Below, one piece after another: positions 10,806 through 27,778 of a stretch of DNA of 64,000 nt. The notes beneath the pieces were generated by a model. It was not told the origin of the DNA, did no database searches, and saw only the letters and a program-made list of their open reading frames with translations. Each line of letters opens with the position of its first letter. The first letter of the stretch is position 1. The DNA lies in IMG/VR virus record IMGVR_UViG_3300042402_002641, positions 216,020 through 280,019 of that record. One strand, written 5' to 3'. The translations under genes were made by a program, and so were the position numbers.

Positions 10806-11162
10806 ATGTACTATGTATGTATAGAAAATAATCAGATCACAGGCATACAGAGTTATGAACCTGCGGTGCCTAACACAGTGTCTGTGGTTACTATCACAGA
10901 TACTCAACACGCACAGATCATGGCGCAGACACACCGATTCGATGTGGCTTCTAGAACTATAGTTGCTGTAGATCAAGCTATTATTAGTCAAAGAGAACAG
11001 GACAGGTTAAACGGTATAGAACGTGAATTTTTAAATTCAACTGATTGGAAAGTTATGCGCCATATTAGGCAAAAAGCTCTGGGAATTGCTACTAGCCTTA
11101 CTGATGCAGAGTACACAGAATTAGAGCAGCAGCGGCAGACCGCGGCAGCTCGCATAGTTTGA
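10806..11162 (+). CDS. Tail fibre assembly chaperone-like protein
   Basis: Small ORF directly after a fibre gene, with an 'R.FL..TDWKV.R....' motif typical of fibre assembly chaperones. Confidence 0.6.
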   Translation: MYYVCIENNQITGIQSYEPAVPNTVSVVTITDTQHAQIMAQTHRFDVASRTIVAVDQAIISQREQDRLNGIEREFLNSTDWKVMRHIRQKALGIATSLTDAEYTELEQQRQTAAARIV

Positions 11163-13901: not shown

Positions 13902-13936
13902 TCGATTAAATATAAGACTTAATCAAAGACAAACGC

Positions 13937-14904: not shown

Positions 14905-14911
14905 CTAAATA
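14905..14911 (+). promoter_or_regulatory. Late promoter (CTAAATA) heading the glycosyltransferase/radical SAM operon
   Basis: TAAATA core in the 57-bp gap. All genes from 14939 to 27769 overlap or abut. Confidence 0.5.
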
Positions 14912-14938
14912 AAGTGCGCAGATAATCAAGGAAAATAC

Positions 14939-15289
14939 ATGAAGGATCAACTCAAAAAAGCTTTGGAGTTTGCTAATTACAGGCAGACGTTTTCAATTCA
15001 ACGTAAGATTCTAAAAGAAAAAATCGCAGCCAAGTTAACACTAGGTTATAATGGTGGACTATTTCAAATTGACAGAACGCTTCTGACTTTTATAGAAATG
15101 TTGCTAGTCAAAGGAAGAAGCAGCGGAGTTGTATTATTAGATACAAACGAAACCCCTATAATGATCGAGGATTTAGTTGCGTTTCGAGATGAATGCTTTG
15201 ATAGGTATTTCGAAGCCACTAGTGAGTATTTTGAACAAGACCAAAATCTCAAAAAAAGTAGATCAGTAGAAAAATTGCTAGAACAATGA
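14939..15289 (+). CDS. Hypothetical protein (possibly tail-assembly related)
   Basis: 116-aa ORF with AAGGA SD and an ATGA overlap with the next gene. Confidence 0.55.
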   Translation: MKDQLKKALEFANYRQTFSIQRKILKEKIAAKLTLGYNGGLFQIDRTLLTFIEMLLVKGRSSGVVLLDTNETPIMIEDLVAFRDECFDRYFEATSEYFEQDQNLKKSRSVEKLLEQ

Positions 15290-16146
15290 ACAAAGGTATA
15301 TTGATCTACGCTCATAATAATCGCACTGTGGACTATGCATTAATGGCGATTATTTCTGGAGGATTAGCTAAAAAATATCTTGGACAGCCTGCGTCGTTGG
15401 TTACTGACCAAGCCACGTTAGATTGGATGATAGAATCTAAGATATACACTCGTGCTCAAACAATTTTTGAAAATATTTTTATAGTTTCTAGACCCGAGTC
15501 AACTAATTCTAGAGGGTTGTATGATGGCACAGAACGCAGTACAGTTCAATTTATGAACGGTAACAGAAATTCCGCCTACGACATTACTCCATATCAACGA
15601 ACACTTTTGATTGACGCAGACTTTCTGATATTTTCCAATAGACTGGCAGAATATTGGGACATAGATGATGATTTTATGATTGGCGAATCTATTAATGATA
15701 TCTATGACAATCAACGACTAGGATATCATGATAACTATGTTTCGGACGTAGGTATTAAATTGTATTGGGCTACTACTGTGATGTTCACAAAAAATGATAA
15801 TTCAAAAATGTTTTTTGATCTTGTGCGCCATGTTAAGGATAACTATCAATACTATGCCGACACATACAGATTTGATTCAAAACAATACAGAAATGATATT
15901 GCATTTAGCGTGGCCAAACACGTATTAGCAGGATTTGAACAGTCACCATTGGGATGTTTACCGCCTGTGTTAACATCATTAGACAGAGATATACTACACT
16001 CTGTAGATGCCGATAAATTAACGTTTCTGATATCCCCGAAATTAGATGAGAATTATTGTGCGGCTTCGATACAGAATATTGACATTCATATAATGAATAA
16101 ACAGAGTATAGTAAGACATAGCGATAAATTACTGGAGCTGATATGA
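15286..16146 (+). CDS. GT-A fold glycosyltransferase-like protein (GT8-like)
   Basis: 'TPYQRTLLIDADFL' DxD motif, N-terminal beta-alpha Rossmann-like start, and 'RNDIAFS'. Confidence 0.65.
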   Translation: MNKGILIYAHNNRTVDYALMAIISGGLAKKYLGQPASLVTDQATLDWMIESKIYTRAQTIFENIFIVSRPESTNSRGLYDGTERSTVQFMNGNRNSAYDITPYQRTLLIDADFLIFSNRLAEYWDIDDDFMIGESINDIYDNQRLGYHDNYVSDVGIKLYWATTVMFTKNDNSKMFFDLVRHVKDNYQYYADTYRFDSKQYRNDIAFSVAKHVLAGFEQSPLGCLPPVLTSLDRDILHSVDADKLTFLISPKLDENYCAASIQNIDIHIMNKQSIVRHSDKLLELI

Positions 16147-16982
16147 AATTCGGATATCTGTTAATAGTAGCAGAGAATGAATTTGTGGACTATCTACAGT
16201 TAGCCTATGCCTTGGCTATCAGTATTAAAAATACACAAAAACCTGGGTTTGATCAAGTGGCACTAGTGATCAATGACAAGCAAAAACTTAAAGATTTAAA
16301 CAGCAGTTGGGTCTTTGATCATGTTATAGAATGGAATCAAGAAACATTCTGGGATGGTCGTAGCTGGATGGATCAGTTGACACCTTTTGACCACACAGTA
16401 TGCTTAGATGTTGACATGCTGTTTATGCGTGACTACAGTCATTGGGTCGAATACTTTATTGAAAACAGCGAATTATATGTTGCTAACAAAAGCTACACCT
16501 ATCGAGGAGAGATAGCTGTTGATCATCATTATCGAAAGACATTTATAAAAAACGATCTCCCTAATCTTTACAGCATGTATACCTTTTTTAAAAAAGATAG
16601 CGAAGCGGTTAAAGAATTTTTTGATCTAGGAAGATATATTATAAAAAATCCTATAGAATTTTCAAATATTTTTTTATCGGATCATAAACCTCGAGTTGTA
16701 GGTACAGATGAATCCTTTGCCTTGGCAGCTAAAATATTAGATATTACCGATGATATTGCATATCCTTTAGAGTTTCCCCGAGTTGTACATATGAAACCTA
16801 TGATACAGAATTGGCCATGGCCTGCTGATTGCTGGAGTGATCATGTAGGATTTTATCTAAATCAAAAAGGAAAACTAAAGATAGGAAATTATCAACAACA
16901 TGATATTGTTCATTATGTGGAAAAAGATAAAATTAACAAGGAAATGATCAATATTCTCGAGGAAGTTTTATGGAAGAAATAA
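16143..16982 (+). CDS. GT-A fold glycosyltransferase-like protein (GT8-like, paralog)
   Basis: 'TPFDHTVCLDVDML' DxD motif, 'TDESFALA', and a C-terminal 'VHY' His motif. Confidence 0.65.
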   Translation: MKFGYLLIVAENEFVDYLQLAYALAISIKNTQKPGFDQVALVINDKQKLKDLNSSWVFDHVIEWNQETFWDGRSWMDQLTPFDHTVCLDVDMLFMRDYSHWVEYFIENSELYVANKSYTYRGEIAVDHHYRKTFIKNDLPNLYSMYTFFKKDSEAVKEFFDLGRYIIKNPIEFSNIFLSDHKPRVVGTDESFALAAKILDITDDIAYPLEFPRVVHMKPMIQNWPWPADCWSDHVGFYLNQKGKLKIGNYQQHDIVHYVEKDKINKEMINILEEVLWKK

Positions 16983-17587
16983 TTGATTTTGATAATTGGC
17001 TTGCAAATTTCAAATTACCTCCTGTAAAATTTGTTGCGGTTTTTAATCCCGACACCGGCGCAGTAGTTAGTGTAGGACCTAGTCATGCCTTTAAAGATCA
17101 AAAACACAAAATATCTATAGATAAAGAATTGGCAGAATCTATAATTAATGCAGAAATTAAAATTAACAACTGCATAGTTGATATAAATTCAAATACTTTA
17201 GAAGTAGCAGAAATAAAAAATACCTATAAGATAGACGATGTGCTGCATAGAATTATTTCTAAGAAAGATTCTGAAATAAAAAACCCAGATATCTATATTA
17301 AATATGATTCAAAACTTAATACTTTTAAAATAGAAATGTCTTCAGAATTTGGGGGAACACGTAAGGCTAGGGCTGGGATAAAGAAAAGAAATATTGTATG
17401 GGATGGTGACACTGAAATGCAATTTTTTATTACAGAATACAACGACCCAAACTTGCTTTTTGAAACAGTAAGTGTTACAATTAACGATCTTACTGGAAAC
17501 CATAAATTGATTACAGGTTTTAACTATCCTAAATTTAGTGTGTACACTAGACGCTTGTTTAAAAACTATATGATAGAATATAAATGA
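16970..17587 (+). CDS. Hypothetical protein in glycosyltransferase cluster
   Basis: 205-aa ORF overlapping both neighbours. Confidence 0.6.
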   Translation: MEEIIDFDNWLANFKLPPVKFVAVFNPDTGAVVSVGPSHAFKDQKHKISIDKELAESIINAEIKINNCIVDINSNTLEVAEIKNTYKIDDVLHRIISKKDSEIKNPDIYIKYDSKLNTFKIEMSSEFGGTRKARAGIKKRNIVWDGDTEMQFFITEYNDPNLLFETVSVTINDLTGNHKLITGFNYPKFSVYTRRLFKNYMIEYK

Positions 17588-18501
17588 AAATTATTGAATT
17601 TGATGTTGTATTTTTAAGCTACGATGAACCTAATGCAGATCTACATTATGCAGATTTATGCAACAAAGTTCCTTGGGCTAAACGTGTACACGGTGTCAAG
17701 GGATCTGATCATGCTCATAAAGCCGCAGCAGAAGCTAGCGAAACAGATTGGTTTATCACTGTTGATGCTGACAACATTGTAGATCCTAAGTTTTTTAATA
17801 TTGACCTAGATATGAGTGATCCTAAGATTCAAGTCTACGGATGGTGCGGTCGAAATGTTATCAACGGCCTTCGATACGGCAATGGCGGTCTAAAAATTTG
17901 GAAAAAAGACTTTGTGCTTAATATGAAAACGCATGAAAACTCAGACAGCGATCGTGGACAGGTAGATTTCTGTTGGGAAGATGGATATCGAAATTTTCCT
18001 TTGAGTTTTAGCGATAGTGTTATTACTGGAAGTCCTTTTCAGGCCTGGAGAGCAGGGTTCCGTGAAGGTGTTAAAATGACCTTACTCGACGGAGTTAGGG
18101 TTCCAGCCCAAGAAATACAACAGAGAATATGGTGGCATAATATTCATAGGTTACGTATGTGGTCCACAGTTGGTAGCCATGAAGAAAACGGAATCTTTGC
18201 AGTTTATGGTGCAAGATTGGGAACCTGGATGGCTAATTGCACCAACTGGAATTATGTTGACGTTAGAGATTTTGAAATACTTAGAGGTATATGGAATCAA
18301 TACGGAAGACCATATGAAGAAGTTAATGGCGAAGGTCTCGTAGACGCAATAAAAGATCTTGGAGACAAAATAAAAATTAATTTAGGATTAGATTGGCCTT
18401 GGTTAGATGAAAGTCAAAGTAAGTATACTTTAGATCTCTACAATGAAACTATGAATTTAAACGATACATATTTTAAAATGCCGGTACCTGCCAATGTATG
18501 A
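17584..18501 (+). CDS. GT-A (GT2-like) glycosyltransferase
   Basis: 'DVVFLSYDEPNA', 'RVHGVKG...AH', 'TVDADN' (DxD), 'YGNGGLK' and 'AWRAGFRE'. Confidence 0.7.
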   Translation: MKIIEFDVVFLSYDEPNADLHYADLCNKVPWAKRVHGVKGSDHAHKAAAEASETDWFITVDADNIVDPKFFNIDLDMSDPKIQVYGWCGRNVINGLRYGNGGLKIWKKDFVLNMKTHENSDSDRGQVDFCWEDGYRNFPLSFSDSVITGSPFQAWRAGFREGVKMTLLDGVRVPAQEIQQRIWWHNIHRLRMWSTVGSHEENGIFAVYGARLGTWMANCTNWNYVDVRDFEILRGIWNQYGRPYEEVNGEGLVDAIKDLGDKIKINLGLDWPWLDESQSKYTLDLYNETMNLNDTYFKMPVPANV

Positions 18502-20161
18502 TATTTTTTATGTTTCTAAAACTGCAGGTAATGACAGTGACTGGGAATATATCAAGTCTAAATATCCCCTTGCGCATCGGTTAACCAACATAAGATCTTT
18601 TGACGACATTAAAATTAATTCTTTCACTAAGATGTTTTGGGTCATCTGGGATGATATACATCTAATAGACACATTTGATCTAACAGAATATAAAGCCACT
18701 AAGTGGGACGACATGTATGTTCACGTTTTTAAAAACGGAGAACATCACGATGGAGTATGTTTATTTCCTAAAGTATTGAACATCTCGCAACGAGAGTTTT
18801 ATCATAGATTTTTTACAGAAAAAAAAGAAATAGATATTTTAGCGAGCGTTCCTAAGAAATACAATGTATACTCACCTTCAAATTATGACGAGTATTTGTC
18901 TATTGATGATGAAATGTTTTGGTTAGTTTGGCCAGAAGTTGAAATTATAGACGAATCAGTTTTTAAATTGTATTTTAGTCATCATAATACCTACGATCGT
19001 AGAGAAAATCATATTTTTAAAAACACATGTAATAACGATGAATCGTATATGAGTGGAGTTATTCTCTGTAGTAAGTATAAACAAATTTCATCTCGAGAGT
19101 TTGAAAAACAATATGTGATCGATAAAAAAGAACATGATATAATTGCGAGTAGATTTCGATATCCGACGTATGTTATTCACAGCTATGAACAATATCTAGA
19201 AATTCTTAAAAATTTAAAAAATAAAATGTTTTGGGGTATATGGCCCGAAGTTGAAATAATTGACACAGAAATCTTTGATTTTTACTTCGATCCCAACAAT
19301 GGAACATACGACCATGATAGAAAAGAAAATCATACATTTAAACATCTGTTTAACAACACCGAAATTTATATTAACGGTGTAGTATTATTTTCTAAAGAAA
19401 AACAAATTAGTCAAAGAGAGTTTATTCATAGATTTTTGATTAATAAAAAAGAACACGATAGAATAGTATCAAAACATCGACTATATGATGTTGTGTTTAT
19501 ATCTTACAACGAATCTAATGCAGATGAAAATTACAATAAGTTACTTAATAAGTGTCCTAGAGCAAAAAGAATACACGGGGTTGAAGGTATACATCAAGCA
19601 CACATTGAAGCAGCATCTATTTGTAATACAGATATGATTTGGATAGTTGACGGAGATGCAATTATTGAAGATAGTTTTGATTTTGATATAGTTATGTCTA
19701 GTTATGATATTAATTGTGTACATGTGTGGCGTAGTCGTAATCCTATTAATGATTTAGAATATGGCAATGGCGGTGTTAAGTTATTGCCTAGAAAGTTAAC
19801 ATTAGATATGGACAAAACTACTCCGGATATGACAACAAGCATATCTAAAAAGTTTAAAGTCATGAATACTGTGTCAAATATTAATTCTTTTAATACTGAC
19901 GAATTTACTACGTGGAGATCGGCATTTAGAGAATGCTGCAAATTAGCCAGTAGAGTAATTAAACGGCAATATGAAGACGAAACACAACAGCGATTAGATA
20001 TTTGGTGCAGTGTAGGGAAAGATAAACAATACGGCGATTTTGCAATAATGGGTGCTAAAATGGGTAGACAATACGGATTAGATAATAAAAATAATCCTGA
20101 AGCGTTGCAAAAGATTAATGATTTTAAATGGCTAAGGAATATATTTAATAATGCTTACTGA
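18494..20161 (+). CDS. GT2-like glycosyltransferase with N-terminal repeated domains
   Basis: The C-terminal domain is paralogous to 17584 ('IVDGDA', 'YGNGGVK', 'WRSAFRE'). Three N-terminal repeats of 'MFW..W...H.FK...GV.L..K..IS.REF...KKE.D'. Confidence 0.7.
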   Translation: MYDIFYVSKTAGNDSDWEYIKSKYPLAHRLTNIRSFDDIKINSFTKMFWVIWDDIHLIDTFDLTEYKATKWDDMYVHVFKNGEHHDGVCLFPKVLNISQREFYHRFFTEKKEIDILASVPKKYNVYSPSNYDEYLSIDDEMFWLVWPEVEIIDESVFKLYFSHHNTYDRRENHIFKNTCNNDESYMSGVILCSKYKQISSREFEKQYVIDKKEHDIIASRFRYPTYVIHSYEQYLEILKNLKNKMFWGIWPEVEIIDTEIFDFYFDPNNGTYDHDRKENHTFKHLFNNTEIYINGVVLFSKEKQISQREFIHRFLINKKEHDRIVSKHRLYDVVFISYNESNADENYNKLLNKCPRAKRIHGVEGIHQAHIEAASICNTDMIWIVDGDAIIEDSFDFDIVMSSYDINCVHVWRSRNPINDLEYGNGGVKLLPRKLTLDMDKTTPDMTTSISKKFKVMNTVSNINSFNTDEFTTWRSAFRECCKLASRVIKRQYEDETQQRLDIWCSVGKDKQYGDFAIMGAKMGRQYGLDNKNNPEALQKINDFKWLRNIFNNAY

Positions 20162-21512
20162 AGAAAAAAAATACAAAAAAGTTATTGAAATTTTAGATTC
20201 TGTTAGTCCGAGTTTTTGTCTAGCAAAATGGCATCAATTAACATTGTATCTACAAAATGGATTTAATCATAGCTGTCACCATCCTAGTCCTCATCAGGTG
20301 CCGTTGGAGGAACTAGCTGTAAATCATAAAGCGTTGCATAACACACAATTTAAAAAAAAGCAGATGCAAAAAATGTTAGATGGCGAGCGTCCTAGTGAAT
20401 GTGATTATTGCTGGAAAGCAGAAGATGCAGGCAGAATAAGTGATCGTGTTTATAAGAGTGCATCGTCATGGGCAAAAATTAATTTTGATTCTGTAATAGA
20501 AAATAAAACAGCAGATGTTAATCCCGCTTATCTAGAAATTAGTTTTAGCAATGTTTGCAATTTTAAATGTGCTTATTGTAGTCCAGATTTAAGCAGCCAA
20601 TGGTTTGAAGAAATTAAAACTCACGGCCCGTATCCAACATCATACAAATACAATAATTTTGATTGGTTTGAAAAAACAGGAAAAATGCCTATTAAACATA
20701 GTGACTATAATCCTTATGTTGAAGCTTTTTGGAAATGGTGGCCTGAGTTATATAGAGATCTACATACCTTAAGATTGACCGGAGGTGAACCATTATTAAG
20801 CAAAGATGCTTGGAAAATGATAGATTATATTGAGGACAATCCTAATAAAAATTTAGTGTTTGCTATCAATACTAACTTATGTGTACCTGATGAGTTAGTT
20901 GATAAAATAATATCGAAGATACAAAATATTTCTATAGATACTAAAGAATTTCAGTTTTTTACCAGTGGTGAAGCACTAGGAGCTCCTGCTGAATATATCA
21001 GATATGGTCTTGATTACAACAAATGGTCTGCTAATCTAGAAAAAGTTTTAGATAACACAAATGTTATTGTTGCAATTATGACTACAGTTAACTTAACCAG
21101 TGTAACTACCTATGCCGACTTTTTGAGATACATTTTAGATCTCAGAGGAAAATATAATAAAAACGCCGATTTTAATAAAGTTCAGTTCATGACAAACTTT
21201 TTAAGATACCCTGAATTTTTATCTTTGACACTACTAGATCGAGAAACTAAAGCAACATTTACTCAAGATATCGAAACTCTAATAGCAGAGAGAGGTGTCT
21301 GGGACGGCTTTGCTACATTAACTTTTTCTGAAGTCGATCAACTACGGCGCATGCTAGATTATATGAATTCTTCAATAGATGATGACAAATTAACATTATT
21401 AAGAACGGATTTTAAATCGTTTGTTGACGAATATGACCGTAGACGAAATACTAATTTTAATCAAGTATTTCCTGAATTAACTAACTTTTACAACCTATGC
21501 AACAAGACATAA
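20151..21512 (+). CDS. Radical SAM protein with N-terminal twitch/SPASM-like Cys cluster
   Basis: CNFKCAYC (CxxxCxxC) and GGEP motifs. N-terminal C...C...CxxC. Confidence 0.85.
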   Translation: MLTEEKKYKKVIEILDSVSPSFCLAKWHQLTLYLQNGFNHSCHHPSPHQVPLEELAVNHKALHNTQFKKKQMQKMLDGERPSECDYCWKAEDAGRISDRVYKSASSWAKINFDSVIENKTADVNPAYLEISFSNVCNFKCAYCSPDLSSQWFEEIKTHGPYPTSYKYNNFDWFEKTGKMPIKHSDYNPYVEAFWKWWPELYRDLHTLRLTGGEPLLSKDAWKMIDYIEDNPNKNLVFAINTNLCVPDELVDKIISKIQNISIDTKEFQFFTSGEALGAPAEYIRYGLDYNKWSANLEKVLDNTNVIVAIMTTVNLTSVTTYADFLRYILDLRGKYNKNADFNKVQFMTNFLRYPEFLSLTLLDRETKATFTQDIETLIAERGVWDGFATLTFSEVDQLRRMLDYMNSSIDDDKLTLLRTDFKSFVDEYDRRRNTNFNQVFPELTNFYNLCNKT

Positions 21513-22825
21513 GAAAAACAATAGAGCTCATCAACGATATCAGTCCTAGTTTTTGTGCGGCCAAATGGTATAATGCCACTATCTGGTTAGGGAATGGTCG
21601 CACCGCCAGTTGCCATTTGCCTCCGGCGCACAGTATTCCCTTAGAAGAAATTAAAAATAATCCAAGTGCTTTACATAATACGACATTTAAAAAACATCGA
21701 AGACTAGAAATGATTCAAGGCAAAAGATGCAAAGAATGTGCATACTGCTGGACTGTAGAAGATAATGCTTCTCCTGATGTATACAGTGATCGTGTCTATA
21801 AGACCAGGATTTATCAAGAAAACGAAATATTGCAATTAGCCAGACTTGATCCTCAAGCAGATATTGATCCTAAAACATTAGAAATTAGTTTTGATAATTT
21901 ATGTAATTTAAGTTGCAGTTATTGTAATTCAGAATTCAGCACAACCTGGGCCAGCGATATTAAACTTAATGGCCCGTATACTGAATTAAAGACTCAGGGC
22001 GGTGGTGCATTTCAAAATTCAGGTGAACATGCATTGCCCTATGGCATTAAGAATGAAAATAATCCCTATATAGAAGCTTTTTTTAAATGGTTTCATGCTA
22101 GCCTTAAAAACAATTTACAAGAGCTTAGAATTACCGGAGGGGAACCTACACGAAGTCCTTGGTTTTGGAAATTATTAGACGAATGCAAAGATACAAAATT
22201 TGATTTTGCAGTTAACAGTAATCTTATAATGGACCAAAATAAACTTGCACAACTCATTGATGCTAGTAAAAAATTTAAAAAGTTTGATTTATACACCAGC
22301 GGAGAGGGCTATGGCGCTCACGGTGAGTTTATTAGATGGGGATTAGATTATAGTTTATGGAGAAAAAATTTAATTCAGTTTGCTCAAGAAGGCAAATACA
22401 GTATGATCCATGTAATGATGACTATTAGTGCTTTGAGCATTTGGTCAATAACTGAATTCATGACAGATATGCTAGAATTAAGAAAACAATTTGGTGGTCA
22501 TCAATTCCACATGAGTCTTAATTTAGTGAGATTTCCTAGCTTTCAAAATTTGAATGTGTTGCCGATAGATCTAAAACAAATCCAGGTAAATAAAATCGAA
22601 ACGTGGCTCAGTGATGCTGTTGGGTTAAGTTCATCCGAACAAAATCAAATAGAAAGAATCGTTGAGTATCTTAAAAATGTTGATCGCAGTCAAGAAGACA
22701 CAGATAGCCAAGAAAATAAACAGCATGATTTAAAAAAATTTACACAACAATATGCTGATAGAAAAAATGTTGATCTCTCAACAGTATTTCCAAAAGAATT
22801 CACACAATGGTTTAACACAATATGA
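21497..22825 (+). CDS. Radical SAM protein (twitch-like N-terminus)
   Basis: CNLSCSYC and GGEP motifs. Close paralog of the preceding gene. Confidence 0.85.
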   Translation: MQQDIRKTIELINDISPSFCAAKWYNATIWLGNGRTASCHLPPAHSIPLEEIKNNPSALHNTTFKKHRRLEMIQGKRCKECAYCWTVEDNASPDVYSDRVYKTRIYQENEILQLARLDPQADIDPKTLEISFDNLCNLSCSYCNSEFSTTWASDIKLNGPYTELKTQGGGAFQNSGEHALPYGIKNENNPYIEAFFKWFHASLKNNLQELRITGGEPTRSPWFWKLLDECKDTKFDFAVNSNLIMDQNKLAQLIDASKKFKKFDLYTSGEGYGAHGEFIRWGLDYSLWRKNLIQFAQEGKYSMIHVMMTISALSIWSITEFMTDMLELRKQFGGHQFHMSLNLVRFPSFQNLNVLPIDLKQIQVNKIETWLSDAVGLSSSEQNQIERIVEYLKNVDRSQEDTDSQENKQHDLKKFTQQYADRKNVDLSTVFPKEFTQWFNTI

Positions 22826-24036
22826 ACGAAGATAAATTCTGTATAATACCTTGGATACACCTTAACACAGAACCCAATGGGCGTGTTAAACCGTGTTGTG
22901 CATATTTTGGAGAAGAGTCGGGAAATTTAAAAAATACTACACTAGAAGAAATATGGAATAACGAACATACTAAATCTATGCGTAGAAGCTTTTTAGAAAA
23001 TAAAATCCCAGAAGGATGTCTAACCTGTACTAAAAAAGAAAGCAGTGGCGGAGTAAGCTACCGGATGGCAGTCACTGAAAGATTCAGTCATCATATCGAA
23101 AAAGCTAAAAGTAATACATTGCCCGATGGTACCTATGAAACATTTGAAATAATTTTTTGGGATTTTAGATTTAGTAATATCTGTAACTTTAAATGCCGTA
23201 TGTGTGGCCCCGGCGCAAGCAGTTCTTGGTACGACGATTTTAGTCCGGAAGAAAAGAAAACTAACATAAAATTCTTAGACAGTTCTTACTATGGAACTGA
23301 TTTAATGAAATATGTTGACCAGTTTATCGATAGTGTTGAAGAAATTTATTTTGCAGGCGGTGAACCGTTGCTTATGGCTGAACATTATCAAATATTAGAT
23401 AAGTTAATTTCTAAAGAACGCTATGATGTATTTTTAAGATACAACACCAACATGAGTACTATTAAGTATAAAGACTATGACTTAATCAACATATGGAAAA
23501 GATTTAAGAGCGTGAAAATATTTGCCAGTATTGACGGTATAGAAGAAAACGCAGAATACAGCAGATCAGGCACGGACTGGCCAAAGGTAGAAGAAAATTT
23601 AAAAAAACTGGTAAACTCTAAAGTTGACTACGTTGTATCTAGTACTATAAACATCTTTAATGTTTTTAATTTTACACACTTAGTAGACAGACTAATAGAA
23701 TTAAAAATGTCAACTAGAAAGATGTTAGTAAGTCATGTTAACTGGCCTCATTACTACATGACTTCAATTCTGCCGGAAGATATAAAGGATAAAATAAGAT
23801 TACAGTTAGACGAACACCTAGAAAAAATAACCCCAACAATTACAGAAGAAGAAAGTAGGTGGCTTGGTAACTTATACAACGAGATTAAATTTTATCTAAT
23901 ACCTACAACTTCACCAGAAGAAACTGTTAAATTGCGGAAAAAATTTAAGTATGATACTGTTAAATTAGATAGTATCAGAAAAGAAGATATTAGAATCGCT
24001 GCGCCCGAATTAGCTGAATGGTTTGATACATTATGA
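22822..24036 (+). CDS. Radical SAM protein (twitch/SPASM-like N-terminus)
   Basis: CNFKCRMC and GGEP motifs. N-terminal 'C..PW......G.V.PCC...GNL...TLEEIWN...C..C'. Confidence 0.85.
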   Translation: MNEDKFCIIPWIHLNTEPNGRVKPCCAYFGEESGNLKNTTLEEIWNNEHTKSMRRSFLENKIPEGCLTCTKKESSGGVSYRMAVTERFSHHIEKAKSNTLPDGTYETFEIIFWDFRFSNICNFKCRMCGPGASSSWYDDFSPEEKKTNIKFLDSSYYGTDLMKYVDQFIDSVEEIYFAGGEPLLMAEHYQILDKLISKERYDVFLRYNTNMSTIKYKDYDLINIWKRFKSVKIFASIDGIEENAEYSRSGTDWPKVEENLKKLVNSKVDYVVSSTINIFNVFNFTHLVDRLIELKMSTRKMLVSHVNWPHYYMTSILPEDIKDKIRLQLDEHLEKITPTITEEESRWLGNLYNEIKFYLIPTTSPEETVKLRKKFKYDTVKLDSIRKEDIRIAAPELAEWFDTL

Positions 24037-25241
24037 ACGATAAATTTATTTGCGACTTTCCCTGGGTGCATCTAAGTGTGTTTCCACAAGGTAATTGTAC
24101 AATTTGTTGTGTAGCCAAACATTCCGGAAAAGGTAACGGGCATTCATGGAATCGTATTAGCGAAGATAAAACTAAAACTGTTACAGTAATGAATAGCACA
24201 GTTTCAGAAATCATTAACTGTGATAATTACAGGGCAATTAGATTAGATATGCTTGCTGGAAAAGTTCCGACAGCATGCGAAGGATGTCACCAGGTAGAGC
24301 AAGCAGGCGGCAGAAGTAAGCGACAATTAGAAACTAATCGAAATTTAGATCATGCGGCATTAACTGCCGATGATGGAGCTATCAAATCAGACTTACGACA
24401 CATAGAACTACGCCTAGGCAACTTTTGTAATCTGAAATGTCGAAGCTGCAATGCAGATTCTAGCACAAGTTGGATTCAAGACTATTATAAACTTAAAGAT
24501 ACAGTAAAGTTAGCCAGCGGTTATCATTGGATTAAAAGCAATCCCGAATTTAGCTTTGACTGGGTCGATGATGAATCGTTTTACGACCAGTTAACAGAGC
24601 TAGCACCTAATCTTGAACAAATACATATCAGTGGCGGCGAACCATTTTTAGTGCCTACGCATTTTAAATTGTTAGAAAAACTTGTTCGCGAAGGCAAGAC
24701 TGATATTGCTATACACTATCATACCAATTTGAATTACAAGTGGGAGAAAATTACTCCGGCATTAGACCTGCTTACACAATTCAAAGAAGTACATATTAAT
24801 TTTAGTATCGACGATGTAGAAGAACGAAATACTTATATTAGAAGTTTAAGTGATTGGAATTTAACTATAAGTAATTTAAAATTATTTCTAACACACTACA
24901 ATTTCATTTTTGCTGTTACTCAAACTGTAAGTGTATATAACTTTATGTATGTAGAAGAATTAACACAATATCTTAAAGAAAACAATATTTACATTAAAGT
25001 GCGTTTGAATCATGTGCAGAGTCCGGATTACTTAGATGCTAATGTATTGCCTAAGCAAGTACGCCAAGATAAGATTAATTCGTTACAAGGAATTGTCATT
25101 CCCCGTATATGGGAAGATTTATACGGTCATTATTACAATCCGGAAGCTAACGGCCAGTGGGATTATTTTAAATACTTTACTGAAAAAATCGACGCAGTAC
25201 GTAACGAAAACTTAAATGATATTTTTCCAAAACTTGCATGA
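24033..25241 (+). CDS. Radical SAM protein (twitch-like N-terminus)
   Basis: CNLKCRSC and GGEP motifs. N-terminal 'CDFPW...CC...CEGC'. Confidence 0.85.
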   Translation: MNDKFICDFPWVHLSVFPQGNCTICCVAKHSGKGNGHSWNRISEDKTKTVTVMNSTVSEIINCDNYRAIRLDMLAGKVPTACEGCHQVEQAGGRSKRQLETNRNLDHAALTADDGAIKSDLRHIELRLGNFCNLKCRSCNADSSTSWIQDYYKLKDTVKLASGYHWIKSNPEFSFDWVDDESFYDQLTELAPNLEQIHISGGEPFLVPTHFKLLEKLVREGKTDIAIHYHTNLNYKWEKITPALDLLTQFKEVHINFSIDDVEERNTYIRSLSDWNLTISNLKLFLTHYNFIFAVTQTVSVYNFMYVEELTQYLKENNIYIKVRLNHVQSPDYLDANVLPKQVRQDKINSLQGIVIPRIWEDLYGHYYNPEANGQWDYFKYFTEKIDAVRNENLNDIFPKLA

Positions 25242-26038
25242 AATTTATTTTTTTAAAAACTGGTGATTATTTAGACCTAGAGCCTAATAATACTCCTATT
25301 GCGTCTGCGTGGTTTGATTATATTTTTTCTAAGCAGATGAATATGAGTTATTTTGCTAGAGATGCATTGTTTGTAACTCGAACTAATGACACTATTAAAG
25401 ATCTAAATTCCGCAATCGATATTGTACATCAATTTGCTATAGAAAAGAACTTGCCCCAACTTATTTTTAATAAAATTATTGACCTTGACCAATCATGGCT
25501 TAATGCTTCTCATAAAAAGTGGGTAAAATACACACACGAATTAAAAAACATTGTTAACGGCGACGATACAAAACAACACTATCCTGCCGTTGTAAAATCT
25601 TGGCAAAACATTAATCTGTTTATCCATTCGTTAGAAAACTATTACTCGGCTTATTTTACTAATACTAAAGGCGCATATCTAGAAGACGTCAAAGTCAATA
25701 TAAGACCAGAAGATTGCGAGTACGCACAACATGACTTAATTCTAAGATTTGACGATTTAGGTAAACACCAATACGATCAATGGTTGACAGGCAGTAGTGT
25801 TGACTGGGAAACTAGTAACTACAAGACAATATCGGCGAGATTTGAATACGCATATAATCCGCAAACAATTAAAGGATTACAGCCAAATCAAGATTATATT
25901 AACTGGTGTTCTAAAAACAACTTACAAGCAATGCCGCCGTTTATTATTTTAGGAAATTTTAAAAAGAATAGATGGGACGTTAAACAACTTATGCATCAAA
26001 ATCTATCGAAAGGATTAGAAGTAGGATTTGAGTTATGA
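25238..26038 (+). CDS. Hypothetical protein
   Basis: 266-aa ORF with ATGA overlaps at both ends. Confidence 0.6.
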   Translation: MKFIFLKTGDYLDLEPNNTPIASAWFDYIFSKQMNMSYFARDALFVTRTNDTIKDLNSAIDIVHQFAIEKNLPQLIFNKIIDLDQSWLNASHKKWVKYTHELKNIVNGDDTKQHYPAVVKSWQNINLFIHSLENYYSAYFTNTKGAYLEDVKVNIRPEDCEYAQHDLILRFDDLGKHQYDQWLTGSSVDWETSNYKTISARFEYAYNPQTIKGLQPNQDYINWCSKNNLQAMPPFIILGNFKKNRWDVKQLMHQNLSKGLEVGFEL

Positions 26039-26880
26039 AGATATATGTAAACGGTGATAGTTTCACCGACGGTGACGGTCTAGCTGATGCAGAAACATTC
26101 CCGGGCATGTACCCGGGACATCATCATGCAGATGGAAATCTAATTGTAGATCGCCGGTGGTCAAATGCTCGGCACGATATACTGTCAAATGACTTGTCAT
26201 TATGGGACACATATCGTAATAATAATCGGAAATATGTTTGGGCAACAATATTAGGAGAGCTTGTTGGTGCTAGTGTGGTTAATAATGCCGTTGGTGGTTC
26301 TTGTATGATGGGAATTGCAACTAGGACTATTGCAGATCTTAGCTCAATACACCTACGTGCAAATTTGCCAGACTACGTCTTTATAGGATTAACAATGTCT
26401 GATCGTCTAGGATGGTACGATAAAGAACATACAGAAAACAATCATACAGGAAGTTGGGTTAAAACAGCTATACCCGCATTCAGCGAAAGAATGTTACCCG
26501 AACACTATAAAAAGATGTTCATGGCTACATGGGCAACACTGTCTGACGAAGAATTGCTTATAAATTATCTAAAAGAATGTTTACAAATTAAAAATTATGT
26601 TAAGCGAAGAATTGGCCGAGATCCTATTTTTTTAAATACCTCATACCAATTTTGGGAGTATAAAAATATAGTTCAATCATCTAAAAATCAATGGCTTAGA
26701 ATGCTTTGGTTCGAGTTATTAGAATTTGATAAGATTAACCCCCAATGGTTTAATTCTGGATCGTTTGACATTGTAACAGCTTGTGGACATGCTATTCCGG
26801 AAGTTCATTCTCAATTTGCAAGAGATATAGCTAGAGAACACTTTGGTTGGGGCAAAAGTCCGGTTGACAAAGATGCCTAG
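26035..26880 (+). CDS. SGNH/GDSL-family protein (acyl hydrolase or acyltransferase)
   Basis: Block I 'YVNGDSFT', block II 'NNAVGGS', and C-terminal catalytic His 'CGHA'. Confidence 0.7.
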   Translation: MKIYVNGDSFTDGDGLADAETFPGMYPGHHHADGNLIVDRRWSNARHDILSNDLSLWDTYRNNNRKYVWATILGELVGASVVNNAVGGSCMMGIATRTIADLSSIHLRANLPDYVFIGLTMSDRLGWYDKEHTENNHTGSWVKTAIPAFSERMLPEHYKKMFMATWATLSDEELLINYLKECLQIKNYVKRRIGRDPIFLNTSYQFWEYKNIVQSSKNQWLRMLWFELLEFDKINPQWFNSGSFDIVTACGHAIPEVHSQFARDIAREHFGWGKSPVDKDA

Positions 26881-27778
26881 AATTTTTCTTCCAACAGTTA
26901 ACGAATATCGAGAAATAAATCGCATTGTAGCATTTGGGTGTAGCCAAACCGCAGGCTCAGAACTTCTTGATTCAAAAAGATATCCAAACATTCCTGATGT
27001 AGAATTAAAAAAACACAGCCTAGGAATAGAAGGATGGCACAAATATTCAGAGAATGAATCAAATCTGCCGTTACATTTTAAAATACAAGACGAAGAACGT
27101 ATGTTAGCGTGGCCTGCACAACTAGCAAAACTTTATAACATTCCTATTCATAACTATGCCGAGCCAGCAACTGGCAATGAGCAACAGATGGCACAATTCT
27201 TAAAAGCAAAATCTGAAGGTGTTATTAGTAACGACACACTAGTGCTCTGGGGATTTACTAGTATGAATCGAGGCTTTTGGATTGACCAAGAACAAGGATG
27301 TTCATATTATCTGCTCGGTAATAACAAGATCTTTAAACAACCCGTTGACATAAACATGTTTAATGAAAAACTGTGGTATAACGGTATAAATTCAGATTAT
27401 ATGTTAGCATGGAGATATTATCAAAGTTTATCTACTATCTTCCATTGGGCTAACGAAATATGTAACGAACAGTTTTTATTCATTCAGGCATTACATTATT
27501 CACCAAGTTACGAACAATGGTCTGCTAAAATAGAAGGTCCAGTAAATCCAACGGTCGAGCTGTTAATGCAAAGATTTTGGGATACTATAAAATACAATTA
27601 CGAAATAAAATACCCAATTTTTAAAGATTTTGAGCAGACAAATCTGTTCACTTGGAGTAAAAGTATTGGCGGTCGACTAGGGTGCGGGCATCCAACATTA
27701 GATGCACATGAAAAATATGCACTTTTAATTAAAAATGAGCTTGACCGGTTAGAACAAGAGTCCAGTTGACAAAGACGC
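26853..27778 (+). repeat. 24-bp direct repeat pair (21/24 identical) flanking the second SGNH gene
   Basis: CAAAAGTCCGGTTGACAAAGATGC (26853-26876) versus CAAGAGTCCAGTTGACAAAGACGC (27755-27778). Confidence 0.75.
26873..27769 (+). CDS. SGNH/GDSL-family protein (paralog)
   Basis: 'VAFGCSQTAG', 'NYAEPATGN' and 'CGHP'. The ATG at 26873 is preferred as the start. Confidence 0.65.
   Translation: MPRIFLPTVNEYREINRIVAFGCSQTAGSELLDSKRYPNIPDVELKKHSLGIEGWHKYSENESNLPLHFKIQDEERMLAWPAQLAKLYNIPIHNYAEPATGNEQQMAQFLKAKSEGVISNDTLVLWGFTSMNRGFWIDQEQGCSYYLLGNNKIFKQPVDINMFNEKLWYNGINSDYMLAWRYYQSLSTIFHWANEICNEQFLFIQALHYSPSYEQWSAKIEGPVNPTVELLMQRFWDTIKYNYEIKYPIFKDFEQTNLFTWSKSIGGRLGCGHPTLDAHEKYALLIKNELDRLEQESS

What the first reader, a model, noticed from the sequence alone, without database searches (positions are those of the whole stretch)
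14905..27769. Late-expressed glycosyltransferase + radical SAM + SGNH operon attached to the tail genes: candidate virion glycan-building/tailoring system
Seen: 13 genes that all overlap or abut, behind a TAAATA late promoter right after the S/T/N-rich fibre genes. They are 2 GT8-like and 2 GT2-like DxD proteins, 4 radical SAM enzymes, 2 SGNH proteins and 3 unknowns. The block looks more AT-rich than the minus-strand core. Known: twitch radical SAM enzymes such as BtrN oxidise sugar-like substrates, SGNH domains (AlgX, OatA-type) transfer or remove O-acyl groups on glycans, and some phages glycosylate their virions. Inference: a pathway that attaches, radically tailors and acylates a glycan on virion proteins (shielding or receptor mimicry), or that remodels the host surface. 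It is physically and temporally separate from the DNA-modification locus. I know of no characterised pathway with this gene set.
Basis: partly seen in the sequence, partly recalled or inferred. Interest (0 to 1): 0.82.

Follow-up and report, generated by a model that had tools for sequence, protein, structure and literature searches.

The report
Phage fibre-linked glycosyltransferase and radical-SAM island
A lake-water jumbo phage carries, right behind its tail-fibre genes, a tightly packed operon of four sugar-transferring enzymes, four radical enzymes and two esterase-like proteins; it most likely builds and chemically tailors a sugar coat, probably on the phage's own fibres, though that target is untested.

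Summary
There are thirteen + strand ORFs at 14939-27769. All 12 junctions overlap by 4-38 nt. They sit behind a CTAAATA motif (14905-14911) that is invariant in 13 divergent relatives.

Enzyme calls:
- g7-g10 are full-length N-terminal-twitch radical SAM proteins (NCBIfam NF033640).
- g2 and g3 are paralogous GT8-like GT-A enzymes; the g2 model matches glycogenin, UGGT, GlyE and LgtC.
- g5 and the C-terminus of g6 are divergent GT-A enzymes with an invariant DxD; the best PDB match is the PBCV-1 capsid glycosyltransferase.
- g12 and g13 are distant paralogs of a viral GDSL/DUF6071-like family. This rests on motifs and predicted folds only.
- g1, g4 and g11 stay unknown.

New findings:
- Fibre genes plus g1-g5 form a fixed core in more than 450 viral contigs and in Ralstonia jumbo phage RsoM2USA.
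- Everything from g6 onward is a swappable cassette rich in radical SAM genes. In relatives it also holds nucleotide-sugar enzymes.
- None of the 13 proteins has a membrane segment.

A sugar-building and tailoring function is well supported. The virion as target is inference. Similar fibre-linked islands were described in pelagimyophages, so I rate this a new variant of a known kind.

The parts
11195..13003 (+). Tail fibre protein (602 aa). It has an N-terminal domain shared with three upstream fibres and is part of the conserved block preceding the operon.
   Evidence: PHROG tail-fibre hits. Conserved at 51-98% in relatives.
13005..14881 (+). Two paralogous S/T/N/G-rich fibre-like proteins: u298 (13005-13901) and u314 (13937-14881). 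They are candidate acceptors and are always directly upstream of g1.
   Evidence: 40-43% S/T/N/G and 0-2 Cys. Synteny in about 80 loci. A u314-like domain lies in RsoM2USA ORF355, directly upstream of the g1 homolog. No family or PDB match.
14905..14911 (+). CTAAATA, a T4-late-type promoter-like motif 33 nt before the g1 start.
   Evidence: Invariant TAAATAA in 13 loci. Positional enrichment genome-wide. TAAATA is also present upstream of the RsoM2USA g1 homolog.
14939..15289 (+). g1, a conserved 116-aa protein of unknown function and first gene of the core.
   Evidence: No hits. 50-96% identical in non-identical relatives. 27% identical to RsoM2USA ORF354, E 5e-17.
15286..16146 (+). g2, a GT8-like retaining-type GT-A glycosyltransferase with DxD at D110/D112 and invariant H268.
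   Evidence: AF2 model pLDDT 89. Foldseek top hits are glycogenin, UGGT, GlyE and LgtC at E about 6e-7 over 230-246 columns. The profile hits only glycogenin in PDB sequences, E 0.18, over the DxD. Invariant residues.
16143..16982 (+). g3, a paralog of g2 (GT8-like GT-A) with DxD at D89/D91.
   Evidence: hhalign of the g2 family against the g3 family gives 96% probability, E 3e-9. Alignment.
16970..17587 (+). g4, a conserved 205-aa protein of unknown function.
   Evidence: No hits. 33-98% identical in non-identical relatives. Its C-terminus is conserved in RsoM2USA.
17584..18501 (+). g5, a divergent GT-A glycosyltransferase with a novel helical C-terminal domain. It is the most conserved gene of the locus (86-100% identity).
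   Evidence: 1232 cluster representatives. Invariant E15, D61, D63, R156, R160 and E161. AF2 pLDDT 92.9. PDB top hit is PBCV-1 A64R, followed by GT-A enzymes. BFVD hits are viral GTs including Che8.
18494..20161 (+). g6. It holds three degenerate copies (aa 27-329, nt 18572-19480) of a roughly 100-aa segment of its own GT-A domain, with the DxD lost. An intact g5-like GT-A domain follows (nt 19484-20161). Similarity to the nearest non-identical relative breaks at about 18865, the end of repeat 1.
   Evidence: g5 against g6 C-terminus, 35% identity. Repeat HMM finds 1-7 degenerate copies in relatives. DNA identity drops from 91.6% to 73% at 18865 and to nothing after 20139.
20151..25241 (+). 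g7-g10, four N-terminal-twitch radical SAM enzymes: 20151-21512, 21497-22825, 22822-24036 and 24033-25241. g7/g8 and g9/g10 are paralog pairs.
   Evidence: NF033640 at E 1e-84 to 1e-113, full length. SPASM lies N-terminal to the rSAM core in Pfam. Invariant C7, C25, C66, C69, CX3CX2C and GGEP. Paralogy.
25238..26038 (+). g11, a 266-aa protein of unknown function in the variable cassette.
   Evidence: No hits. Only a 27%-identical homolog in L086.
26035..26880 (+). g12, an SGNH/GDSL-like protein of a virus-only family (GDS Ser9, N83, G88, H252, H258).
   Evidence: 51 homologs, none with a GDSL Pfam hit. Invariant residues. The Atlas model has TM 0.55-0.63 to viral clusters carrying Lipase_GDSL/DUF6071. 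No PDB sequence hit.
26843..27769 (+). g13, a distant paralog of g12 with GCS in place of GDS. It is rare and has a TTG start overlapping g12 by 38 nt.
   Evidence: hhalign against the g12 family gives 99.4% probability, E 6e-22, with motifs in register. Only 3 clusters in 5.8 billion proteins.

Best explanation
This is a late-expressed, entirely cytoplasmic operon for glycosyl transfer and sugar tailoring, physically and evolutionarily tied to the tail-fibre module of a freshwater jumbo myovirus.

Proposed mechanism:
1. A fixed core attaches and extends a base glycan from host nucleotide sugars. The core is g1, two GT8-like retaining GT-A enzymes (g2, g3), g4 and the highly conserved GT-A enzyme g5. 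The acceptor is most likely the S/T/N-rich fibre-like proteins encoded immediately upstream.
2. A swappable cassette then diversifies that glycan. In this genome it holds g6 (dead GT-A repeats plus a live GT-A domain), four N-terminal-twitch radical SAM enzymes, g11 and two SGNH-like proteins.
3. The radical SAM enzymes abstract hydrogen from sugar C-H bonds. The outcome could be oxidation, epimerisation, deoxygenation or C-C chemistry; which one is unknown.
4. The SGNH-like proteins add or remove O-acyl groups.

What is shown: gene content, folds, catalytic motifs, operon structure, the promoter-motif footprint, the core-plus-cassette architecture, and the sugar-enzyme company kept by these radical SAM enzymes.

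What is inferred: late timing, a sugar substrate for the radical SAM enzymes, acyl chemistry, and above all the virion protein as acceptor.
For: Glycosyl transfer:
- Four GT-A domains have invariant DxD motifs.

Radical SAM enzymes:
- All four are full-length family members with both Fe-S motifs intact.

Sugar context of the radical SAM family:
- L084 has 3 GT7-LamG genes, a cytidylyltransferase, 7 N-twitch rSAMs, then RmlC-like, RmlD/epimerase and TPP enzyme genes.
- Sister cassettes at the same locus carry an NAD epimerase/dehydratase, a UDP-Glc/GDP-Man dehydrogenase, a B12-rSAM and a 2OG oxygenase.
- All 3 bacterial contexts examined contain a GT. One also has FdtA and a hexose 2,3-dehydratase.

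Link to the fibres:
- The order fibre, u298/u314, g1 to g5 is fixed in about 80 loci.
- The same order recurs in RsoM2USA at only 27-41% protein identity, next to the tail sheath and structural genes (PMC8504454).

Co-transcription and the late-type signal.

Cytoplasmic location:
- No hydrophobic segment reaches transmembrane level in any of the 13 proteins.

Diversifying exchange:
- The cassette is replaced between relatives that are 92% identical in DNA, with the breakpoint at the g6 repeats.

Precedent:
- The nearest solved structure to g5 is a virus-encoded capsid-glycosylating GT.
- The GT of Che8, a phage cited for virion glycosylation, is among the viral fold matches (Freeman et al. 2023 as cited in PMC12801897).
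- Virion glycoproteins were stained in jumbo phage XacN1, which is related to RsoM2USA (PMC5852040).

Expression:
- Short contigs from lake metatranscriptomes match g1-g3 and the g5/g6 junction. This is weak, because DNA carry-over is not excluded.
Against: - No glycan has been observed on any virion of this clade.
- XacN1, where glycoproteins were seen, gave no hit to g2, g3 or g5.
- GT8-like and GT-A folds do not discriminate protein acceptors from lipid, glycan or small-molecule acceptors.
- The window encodes no recognisable nucleotide-sugar synthesis gene near the operon.
- Cassettes are unusually rich in radical SAM genes. A further 9 of 31 accessory ORFs are other rSAM types. That pattern is more typical of peptide or natural-product tailoring than of known glycan pathways.
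- TAAATA motifs also precede some minus-strand genes near replication genes, so 'late' rests on analogy with T4.
- The SGNH assignment fails curated thresholds, lacks the block III Asn, and has a non-conserved Asp.
Confidence: 0.45

Rival explanations
1. Host envelope remodelling. The GTs and tailoring enzymes alter the infected cell's LPS, capsule or S-layer glycan at the cytoplasmic face, using host lipid carriers and export machinery. This would block superinfection by competing phages or stop progeny re-adsorbing to lysing cells.
For: This is the published reading of the analogous fibre-linked island with GT8 genes and rSAM cassettes in pelagimyophages (PMC7029224). LgtC, an LOS-acting GT8, is among the g2 fold hits. 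Hypervariability resembles O-antigen loci. Jumbo phages have long latent periods (270 min in RsoM2USA, PMC8504454), which leaves time for a surface change to matter.
Against: None of the 13 proteins has a membrane segment, and nothing resembles a flippase, polymerase or ligase. The late-type promoter and conserved adjacency to fibre genes, even in a very distant phage, fit a virion role better than an exclusion function, which is usually expressed early. The extreme conservation of g5 (86-100%) across phages with divergent fibres, and so possibly different hosts, argues against a host-specific glycan acceptor.
Confidence: 0.2
2. Small-molecule pathway. The operon makes a free glycoside or an aminoglycoside-like or oligosaccharide metabolite late in infection, for example one that inhibits competing phages or microbes. 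It would not modify a macromolecule.
For: Bacterial N-twitch rSAM homologs sit in natural-product-like clusters. One has ACP/KS/GT2 genes. Another has B12-rSAM, FdtA, a 2,3-dehydratase, GT28 and PKS genes. BtrN-type twitch enzymes act in aminoglycoside pathways (established knowledge). A cyanophage paper speculates on 'antibiotic synthesis' for an rSAM plus amino-sugar gene group (PMC12801897).
Against: There is no scaffold-forming enzyme (PKS, NRPS, cyclitol synthase) and no exporter in the window operon. The conserved linkage to fibre genes is unexplained by this model. Two GT8-like, one GT-A and one further GT-A enzyme in a fixed order look more like stepwise glycan assembly on a fixed acceptor.
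Confidence: 0.12
3. RiPP-like protein maturation. The radical SAM enzymes act directly on amino-acid residues of a phage structural protein or of a small peptide such as g1, by epimerisation, C-methylation or cross-linking. The GTs add sugars as one modification among several.
For: Cassettes are dominated by radical SAM enzymes of several types, including B12-binding ones, plus a 2OG oxygenase. This recalls proteusin-type maturation (established knowledge). One bacterial homolog lies beside small ORFs, a C39-peptidase ABC exporter and a GT2. The glycocin S-glycosyltransferases SunS and ThuS are among the g5 fold hits.
Against: The fibre proteins have 0-2 Cys, so thioether chemistry is unlikely. 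There is no recognisable leader-peptide-binding (RRE) domain or protease. In viral contigs the family travels with nucleotide-sugar enzymes.
Confidence: 0.13
4. DNA hypermodification. The GTs glycosylate modified bases in phage DNA and the radical SAM enzymes tailor the adduct.
For: Phage GTs classically glucosylate DNA, and radical SAM enzymes occur in thymidine hypermodification pathways (established knowledge). The genome invests in DNA modification: FolE at 36247-36996 and QueE-like at 32183-33037.
Against: The operon is on the structural strand behind a late-type promoter, attached to fibre genes in both distant lineages. The deazaguanine genes lie elsewhere on the other strand. No base hydroxymethylase or kinase is in the operon. 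DNA modification must act during replication, not late.
Confidence: 0.05

Closest known systems
Host recognition cluster (HRC) of pelagimyophages and cyanomyophages (Zaragoza-Solas et al. 2020, PMC7029224)
   Same: A hypervariable island inside the tail-fibre region of large T4-related myoviruses. It contains GT8-type glycosyltransferases, LPS-type sugar genes and radical SAM gene cassettes that differ between close relatives.
   Different: The phage here is a freshwater jumbo phage whose DNA polymerase is nearest to Phosso/Atu_ph07, not a pelagimyophage. The HRC description is at annotation level. It did not define the fixed g1-g5 core, the N-twitch rSAM family, the SGNH-like pair or the degenerate GT repeats, and it interpreted the GTs as host O-chain modifiers.
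Virus-encoded virion glycosylation: PBCV-1 A64R and partners; mycobacteriophage Che8-type GTs (Freeman et al. 2023, cited in PMC12801897)
   Same: Soluble, virus-encoded GT-A enzymes that glycosylate structural proteins in the cytoplasm. In phages the GT genes lie next to structural genes. A64R is the nearest solved structure to g5 and the Che8 GT appears among the viral fold matches.
   Different: Sequence identity is only 11-22% over the Rossmann-like half. Those systems have no radical SAM or SGNH partners and no core-plus-cassette architecture. Glycosylation is demonstrated there and not here.
NCBIfam NF033640, N-terminal twitch domain radical SAM family
   Same: g7-g10 are bona fide full-length members with both cluster motifs.
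   Different: To my knowledge, and in the library searched, the family has no characterised member. Here it occurs as 4 tandem paralogs in a phage. Characterised twitch enzymes such as BtrN and MoaA carry the auxiliary domain at the C-terminus.
Ralstonia jumbo phage RsoM2USA ORF347-355 (MG752970; PMC8504454)
   Same: The only deposited phage genome of 50,697 with the core. It has homologs of g1, g2, g3, g4 (C-terminus) and g5, an N-twitch rSAM and a g6-C-like GT. They are in the same order, behind a u314-like fibre protein and TAAATA motifs.
   Different: 27-45% identity. There is a single rSAM and no degenerate GT repeats or SGNH-like genes. All ORFs are annotated hypothetical, and none was among the ten virion bands identified.
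Bacterial O-antigen/capsule loci and deoxysugar natural-product clusters
   Same: Stepwise GTs plus tailoring enzymes. Cassette-like replacement generates structural diversity. Related cassettes contain epimerase/dehydratase, dehydrogenase and RmlC-type genes.
   Different: No Wzx/Wzy/ABC export, no initiating phosphoglycosyl transferase and no membrane protein. The radical SAM content is far higher than in typical O-antigen loci.

Membership tests
Radical SAM superfamily / NF033640 N_Twi_rSAM | Full-length match above the curated NCBIfam cut-off (170 bits) | tested here: met
   g7 348, g8 283, g9 380 and g10 335 bits, covering model positions 1-2 to 394-398 of 398.
Radical SAM superfamily / NF033640 N_Twi_rSAM | CX3CX2C motif for the SAM-binding [4Fe-4S] cluster, plus the GGE motif | tested here: met
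   C121, C125, C128 and G179-G180-E181-P182 (g9 numbering) are invariant in 17 sequences including g7-g10.
Radical SAM superfamily / NF033640 N_Twi_rSAM | Auxiliary-cluster (twitch/SPASM) cysteines N-terminal to the core | tested here: met
   Pfam SPASM at residues 7-70 (g9) and 7-86 (g10), before the Radical_SAM domain at 117-284 and 128-268. C7, C25, C66 and C69 are invariant.
Radical SAM superfamily / NF033640 N_Twi_rSAM | Reductive SAM cleavage and identity of the substrate | not testable with these tools
   Needs anaerobic enzyme assays.
GT8-like retaining GT-A glycosyltransferases (g2, g3) | GT-A fold closest to GT8/GT24 structures | tested here: met
   The g2 model (pLDDT 89.3) has top-50 Foldseek hits to glycogenin, UGGT, GlyE, LgtC and Skp1 GalT, at probability 1.0 and E 6e-7 to 1e-5. 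g3 was not modelled; it is linked through hhalign at 96%.
GT8-like retaining GT-A glycosyltransferases (g2, g3) | DxD metal/nucleotide-sugar motif | tested here: met
   D110/D112 (g2) and D89/D91 (g3) are invariant and align with each other and with the glycogenin DxD.
GT8-like retaining GT-A glycosyltransferases (g2, g3) | Match to Pfam PF01501 (Glyco_transf_8) at gathering threshold | tested here: not met
   No Pfam hit at E<=0.01. The PDB profile hit to glycogenin has E 0.18 only. I therefore call these GT8-like, not GT8 members.
GT2-like GT-A glycosyltransferases (g5, g6 C-terminal domain) | GT-A fold with DxD | tested here: met
   The g5 model (pLDDT 92.9) has PDB hits that are nearly all GT-A glycosyltransferases, with a few related nucleotidyltransferases (HddC, thymidylyltransferase), at probability up to 1.0. 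D61/D63 are invariant in 37 sequences. The g6 C-terminus is 35% identical to g5.
GT2-like GT-A glycosyltransferases (g5, g6 C-terminal domain) | Match to a Pfam GT2 model at gathering threshold | tested here: not met
   Only sub-threshold matches across the three GT2 models (6, 3 and 2 members of 37 scanned), best E 0.019, confined to the DxD strand. TM-scores of 0.24-0.37 reflect a novel C-terminal helical half.
SGNH/GDSL hydrolase superfamily (g12, g13) | Block I G-D-S nucleophile Ser and block II Gly | tested here: met
   G7, S9, N83 and G88 are invariant in 18 g12-family sequences. g13 has G32-C33-S34 in register.
SGNH/GDSL hydrolase superfamily (g12, g13) | Block III Asn (GxND) and block V DxxH | tested here: not met
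   Block III reads G-L-T with no Asn. Block V has invariant His252 and His258, but the Asp is absent or displaced (C-G-H here, D-G-H in some relatives).
SGNH/GDSL hydrolase superfamily (g12, g13) | SGNH flavodoxin-like fold or a curated model match | tested here: inconclusive
   No Pfam, NCBIfam or PDB-sequence hit. The Atlas's own model of g12 (pTM 0.80) aligns at TM 0.55-0.63 with viral clusters of which 10-22% carry Lipase_GDSL and up to 40% DUF6071.
T4-type late promoter | TATAAATA-like element at a fixed short distance upstream of late genes | tested here: met
   CTAAATA (7 of 8) lies 33 nt before g1. It is invariant in 13 loci. Eight of 40 TAAATA sites lie at 30-38 nt, against 0.23 expected.
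T4-type late promoter | gp55-type sigma dependence and late timing | not tested
   No time-resolved expression data. Metatranscriptome contigs show presence only.
Phage virion glycosylation systems | GT genes embedded in the structural gene module | tested here: met
   Directly downstream of fibre genes here and in RsoM2USA.
Phage virion glycosylation systems | Glycan demonstrably attached to virion proteins | not testable with these tools
   Needs virions. The only indirect precedent is in XacN1, related to RsoM2USA (PMC5852040), which gave no hit to g2, g3 or g5.
Pelagimyophage/cyanomyophage host recognition cluster | Hypervariable island with fibres, GT8-type genes and rSAM cassettes | tested here: met
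   compare PMC7029224.
Pelagimyophage/cyanomyophage host recognition cluster | Belongs to the PMP/CMP lineage of T4-like phages, between VrlC and gp14 | tested here: not met
   The DNA polymerase is nearest to the jumbo phages Phosso and Atu_ph07 (50% and 46%). Related contigs reach 195-282 kb. VrlC and gp14 were not identified in the window.

The most novel reading that the evidence does not exclude
Tail-fibre proteins of a widespread clade of freshwater and soil jumbo phages carry glycans whose sugars are rewritten by batteries of N-terminal-twitch radical SAM enzymes. The tailoring cassette is exchanged between near-identical phages by recombination at the degenerate GT-A repeats of g6. This would give the phage a glycan 'serotype' that tunes host recognition or evades host defences. 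It would be the first radical-SAM-tailored viral glycoprotein and the first assigned function for family NF033640.
Probability: 0.3. Interest if true: 0.85.

Novelty: new variant of a known kind. Interest (0 to 1): 0.62.

Why it matters
Phage virion glycosylation is known from only a few systems, and none involves radical chemistry. If this operon decorates fibres, host recognition by a very common group of lake phages would depend on a swappable, enzyme-written glycan layer as well as on fibre protein sequence. The group includes more than 450 viral contigs and recurs in at least 18 lake metagenome runs. That would affect host-range prediction and phage engineering.

It would also give a substrate class and a tractable model to NF033640, a radical SAM family with thousands of members and no known function. 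The model is RsoM2USA, which is cultured. Even under the rival readings (host-surface remodelling or a late-made metabolite), the fixed GT core plus rSAM cassette is an undescribed biosynthetic unit.

Tried and rejected
Searches that found nothing useful:
- Megablast of the block and of 24 kb of core against 50,697 phage records gave no match, or only a 71-nt match.
- Pfam, NCBIfam and PHROGs gave nothing usable for g1-g6 and g11-g13.
- PDB sequence-profile searches gave nothing for g3, g12, g4, g1, g11 and u298/u314.
- Literature searches for the N-twitch family, and for rSAM with phage glycosylation, found no characterised member.

Procedural failures:
- The first genome-contig query, with a 17-sequence rSAM alignment, was too divergent. 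It was repeated with 9 sequences.
It was rerun without them.

Ideas considered and set aside:
- Foreign origin inferred from low GC. GC3 equals that of the fibre genes.
- An intrinsic terminator after g13. The fold is not better than shuffles, z = -0.69.
- The cytidylyltransferase-like gene at 52878-53924 as a sugar-activating partner. It has only a generic CTP_transf_like hit, lies on the other strand and is far away.
- Correlation between g6 repeat number and rSAM count. None is evident.
- The DNA-modification reading (see rivals).

Full report
**What is there**

The window carries thirteen + strand ORFs between 14939 and 27769. I call them g1-g13. All twelve junctions overlap by 4-38 nt, and a 57-nt spacer separates g1 from the preceding gene. 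Upstream lie four tail-fibre proteins and two paralogous S/T/N/G-rich fibre-like proteins, u298 and u314. Downstream, the block ends against convergent minus-strand genes.

GC is 0.30-0.38 in the block against 0.40-0.46 elsewhere. Third-position GC (0.22-0.31) is the same as in the fibre genes (0.27-0.28). The AT-richness is therefore real but mostly reflects amino-acid composition. It is not evidence of recent import.

**Promoter**

The spacer holds CTAAATA at 14905-14911. In an alignment of this spacer from 13 relatives, whose flanking proteins are only 33-83% identical, TAAATAA is invariant while the surrounding bases vary freely.

Across the window, 8 of 40 TAAATA sites lie 30-38 nt upstream of a same-strand ORF start. 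Random placement gives 0.23, and none of 5000 trials reaches 8. The fourteen other hexamers of the same composition give 0-3. TAAATA is also the rarest of the fifteen.

It is therefore a real positional signal of the T4-late type. That it acts late is inferred by analogy. Some copies precede minus-strand genes near replication functions.

**Radical SAM enzymes**

g7-g10 all match NCBIfam NF033640 (twitch domain-containing radical SAM protein) over its full length, at 283-380 bits against a cut-off of 170. Pfam places the SPASM-type auxiliary domain before the radical SAM core, not after it.

Four N-terminal cysteines, the CX3CX2C motif and GGEP are invariant in 17 diverse members, including all four paralogs. 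g7/g8 and g9/g10 are paralog pairs. I found no characterised member of this family.

**Glycosyltransferases**

No curated model recognises g2, g3, g5 or g6.

- g2 and g3 families: they are homologous (hhalign 96%, E 3e-9). A g2 profile hits only glycogenin in PDB sequences (E 0.18), aligned across the DxD.
- g2 model: the AlphaFold model (pLDDT 89) matches glycogenin, UGGT, GlyE, LgtC and the Skp1 galactosyltransferase at E about 1e-6 over 230-246 columns. D110, D112 and H268 are invariant. g2 and g3 are thus GT8-like retaining-type GT-A enzymes, but not Pfam GT8 members.
- g5 model: it has pLDDT 92.9. Its N-terminal half is a GT-A domain. The best solved match is the PBCV-1 A64R capsid-glycosylating enzyme, followed by GT2-type enzymes. 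Viral matches include GTs of giant viruses and of mycobacteriophage Che8.
- g5 residues and family: D61 and D63 are invariant. The C-terminal helical half has no match. The family has 1232 cluster representatives. The Atlas clusters nearest to g5 are 58-100% viral.
- g6: it ends in a g5-like domain (35% identity).

**SGNH-like proteins**

g12 belongs to a small family known only from metagenomes, whose nearest Atlas clusters are 98-100% viral. It has invariant G7, S9, N83, G88, H252 and H258. This gives blocks I and II and the block V histidine of SGNH hydrolases. The block III asparagine and a conserved aspartate are missing.

The Atlas's own model of g12 superposes at TM 0.55-0.63 on viral clusters that partly carry Lipase_GDSL or DUF6071. 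PDB sequences give nothing.

g13 is rare, with three clusters. It is clearly homologous to the g12 family (hhalign 99.4%, E 6e-22) with the motifs in register and GCS in place of GDS.

An esterase or acyltransferase-like function is plausible but not established. g1, g4 and g11 remain unknown.

**Comparative anatomy**

A scan with g5 found 453 viral contigs. In about 80 fetched loci the order fibre, u298/u314, g1, g2, g3, g4, g5, g6 is fixed. g5 is by far the most conserved gene at 86-100% identity. The fibre is 47-98% identical and g4 33-98%.

From g6 onward the content changes:
- One to five N-twitch radical SAM genes, sometimes fused in pairs.
- Other radical SAM types: 9 of 31 accessory ORFs.
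- A B12-binding radical SAM, a UDP-Glc/GDP-Man dehydrogenase, an NAD epimerase/dehydratase and a 2OG oxygenase.
- g11 and g12 occur only in this genome and one other fetched locus.

The nearest non-identical relative is 91.6% identical in DNA up to window position 18865. Identity then falls to 73%, and nothing aligns after 20139. The cassette is thus replaced wholesale.

The breakpoint coincides with the end of the first of three degenerate repeats in g6. These repeats are copies of a roughly 100-aa segment of g6's own GT-A domain with the DxD lost (WDD or WPE). Their number ranges from 1 to 7 in relatives.

**Who carries it**

The DNA polymerase is nearest to the jumbo phages Phosso and Atu_ph07 (50% and 46%). 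Related contigs reach 195-282 kb. The sequence recurs in at least 18 lake-water metagenome runs.

Among 50,697 deposited phage genomes, only Ralstonia jumbo phage RsoM2USA has homologs of g2, g3 and g5. There, ORF354-347 repeat the order g1, g2, g3, g4, g5, N-twitch rSAM, g6-C-like GT. They follow a u314-like fibre protein (ORF355) and TAAATA motifs. They sit next to the tail sheath (ORF359) and a structural protein (ORF356) (PMC8504454).

Conservation of this neighbourhood at 27-45% protein identity is the strongest argument that the GT core is functionally tied to the fibre module.

**Company kept by the radical SAM family**

On a 200-kb viral contig, seven N-twitch genes lie between three GT7-LamG fusions with a cytidylyltransferase on one side and RmlC-like, RmlD/epimerase-like and TPP-enzyme genes on the other.

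About 400 bacterial loci encode relatives at 26-41% identity. I examined three:
- One has ACP, ketosynthase and GT2 genes.
- One has B12-rSAM, FdtA, a hexose 2,3-dehydratase, GT28 and PKS genes.
- One has small ORFs, a C39 ABC exporter and a GT2.

A GT is present in every case. Sugar chemistry is the common denominator, although peptide or natural-product contexts are not excluded.

**Mechanism and rivals**

None of the 13 proteins has a transmembrane-grade hydrophobic segment, and no export function is present. The chemistry is therefore cytoplasmic.

The best-supported model is stepwise glycosylation by the fixed core, followed by cassette-specific radical and acyl tailoring. The adjacent fibre-like proteins are the most likely acceptor. 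My confidence is about 0.8 for the glycan-building and tailoring part and about 0.45 for the whole statement including the virion target.

Rivals:
- Host envelope remodelling, the published reading for the analogous pelagimyophage island (PMC7029224).
- A soluble glycoside.
- RiPP-like protein maturation.
- DNA hypermodification.

Indirect precedent for virion glycoproteins in related jumbo phages exists for XacN1 (PMC5852040), but XacN1 gave no hit to g2, g3 or g5. Metatranscriptome contigs cover parts of g1-g3 and the g5/g6 junction at low depth. This is compatible with expression but proves neither expression nor its timing.

**Verdict**

The system is a new variant of a known kind (phage fibre-linked glycosylation islands). 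Three features are undescribed: a fixed five-gene core, a radical-SAM-dominated swappable cassette, and degenerate GT repeats at the exchange point. A cultured model, RsoM2USA, makes the question directly testable.

Noticed in passing
window 18572-19480 (g6 aa 27-329): Three tandem, catalytically degenerate copies of a segment of g6's own GT-A domain. The copy number varies from 1 to 7 among relatives. The similarity breakpoint with the closest relative falls at the end of repeat 1 (about 18865), which suggests the repeats act as recombination substrates for cassette exchange.
   Followed up: partly
window 32183-33037 (-) and 36247-36996 (-): A QueE-like radical SAM and GTP cyclohydrolase I (FolE).
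   Followed up: no
window 46819-47922 (-) and 47937-48665 (-): A fifth radical SAM protein (367 aa) matches the same PHROG (14086) as g7. It lies next to a HODM_asu-like (haem-dependent oxidative N-demethylase alpha-like) protein and close to the DNA polymerase gene. Its function and its relation to the operon are unknown.
   Followed up: no
window, whole: TAAATA is the rarest of the 15 hexamers of its composition (40 sites against 55-145). A fifth of its sites sit 30-38 nt before ORF starts on both strands. These include sites upstream of u314 (13907) and of several minus-strand genes (59818, 55533, 43717, 30038).
   Followed up: partly
window 18558-18564 (+): A second CTAAATA lies inside the start of g6, just upstream of the variable part. 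It could be an internal promoter for the cassette. Its conservation was not checked.
   Followed up: no
L009:14252-16705 and L066:14201-16678: In some relatives two N-twitch radical SAM enzymes are fused into one 817-825 aa protein.
   Followed up: no
L084:289-19628 (200-kb JGI viral contig): A much larger version of the theme on another big phage. It has three GT7 (beta-1,4-GalT-like) enzymes fused to LamG lectin-like domains, a cytidylyltransferase, seven consecutive N-twitch rSAM genes, RmlC-like, three SDR epimerase/dehydratases and a TPP-dependent enzyme.
   Followed up: partly
window 10807-11160 (+): The 391-nt 'gap' between two fibre genes holds a small unannotated ORF of about 118 aa that starts right at the stop of the upstream fibre gene. 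It could be a fibre chaperone or assembly factor.
   Followed up: no
window 56563-58917 (-): A 784-aa protein has a very strong match (E 2.5e-248) to a PHROG annotated as ATP-dependent (Lon-like) protease. This is an unusual phage-encoded function.
   Followed up: no
window 11195-13003 (tf602 C-terminus): By eye, the fibre C-terminus resembles an intramolecular chaperone or auto-cleaving (S74-like) domain. This was not confirmed by Pfam at E<=0.01.
   Followed up: no
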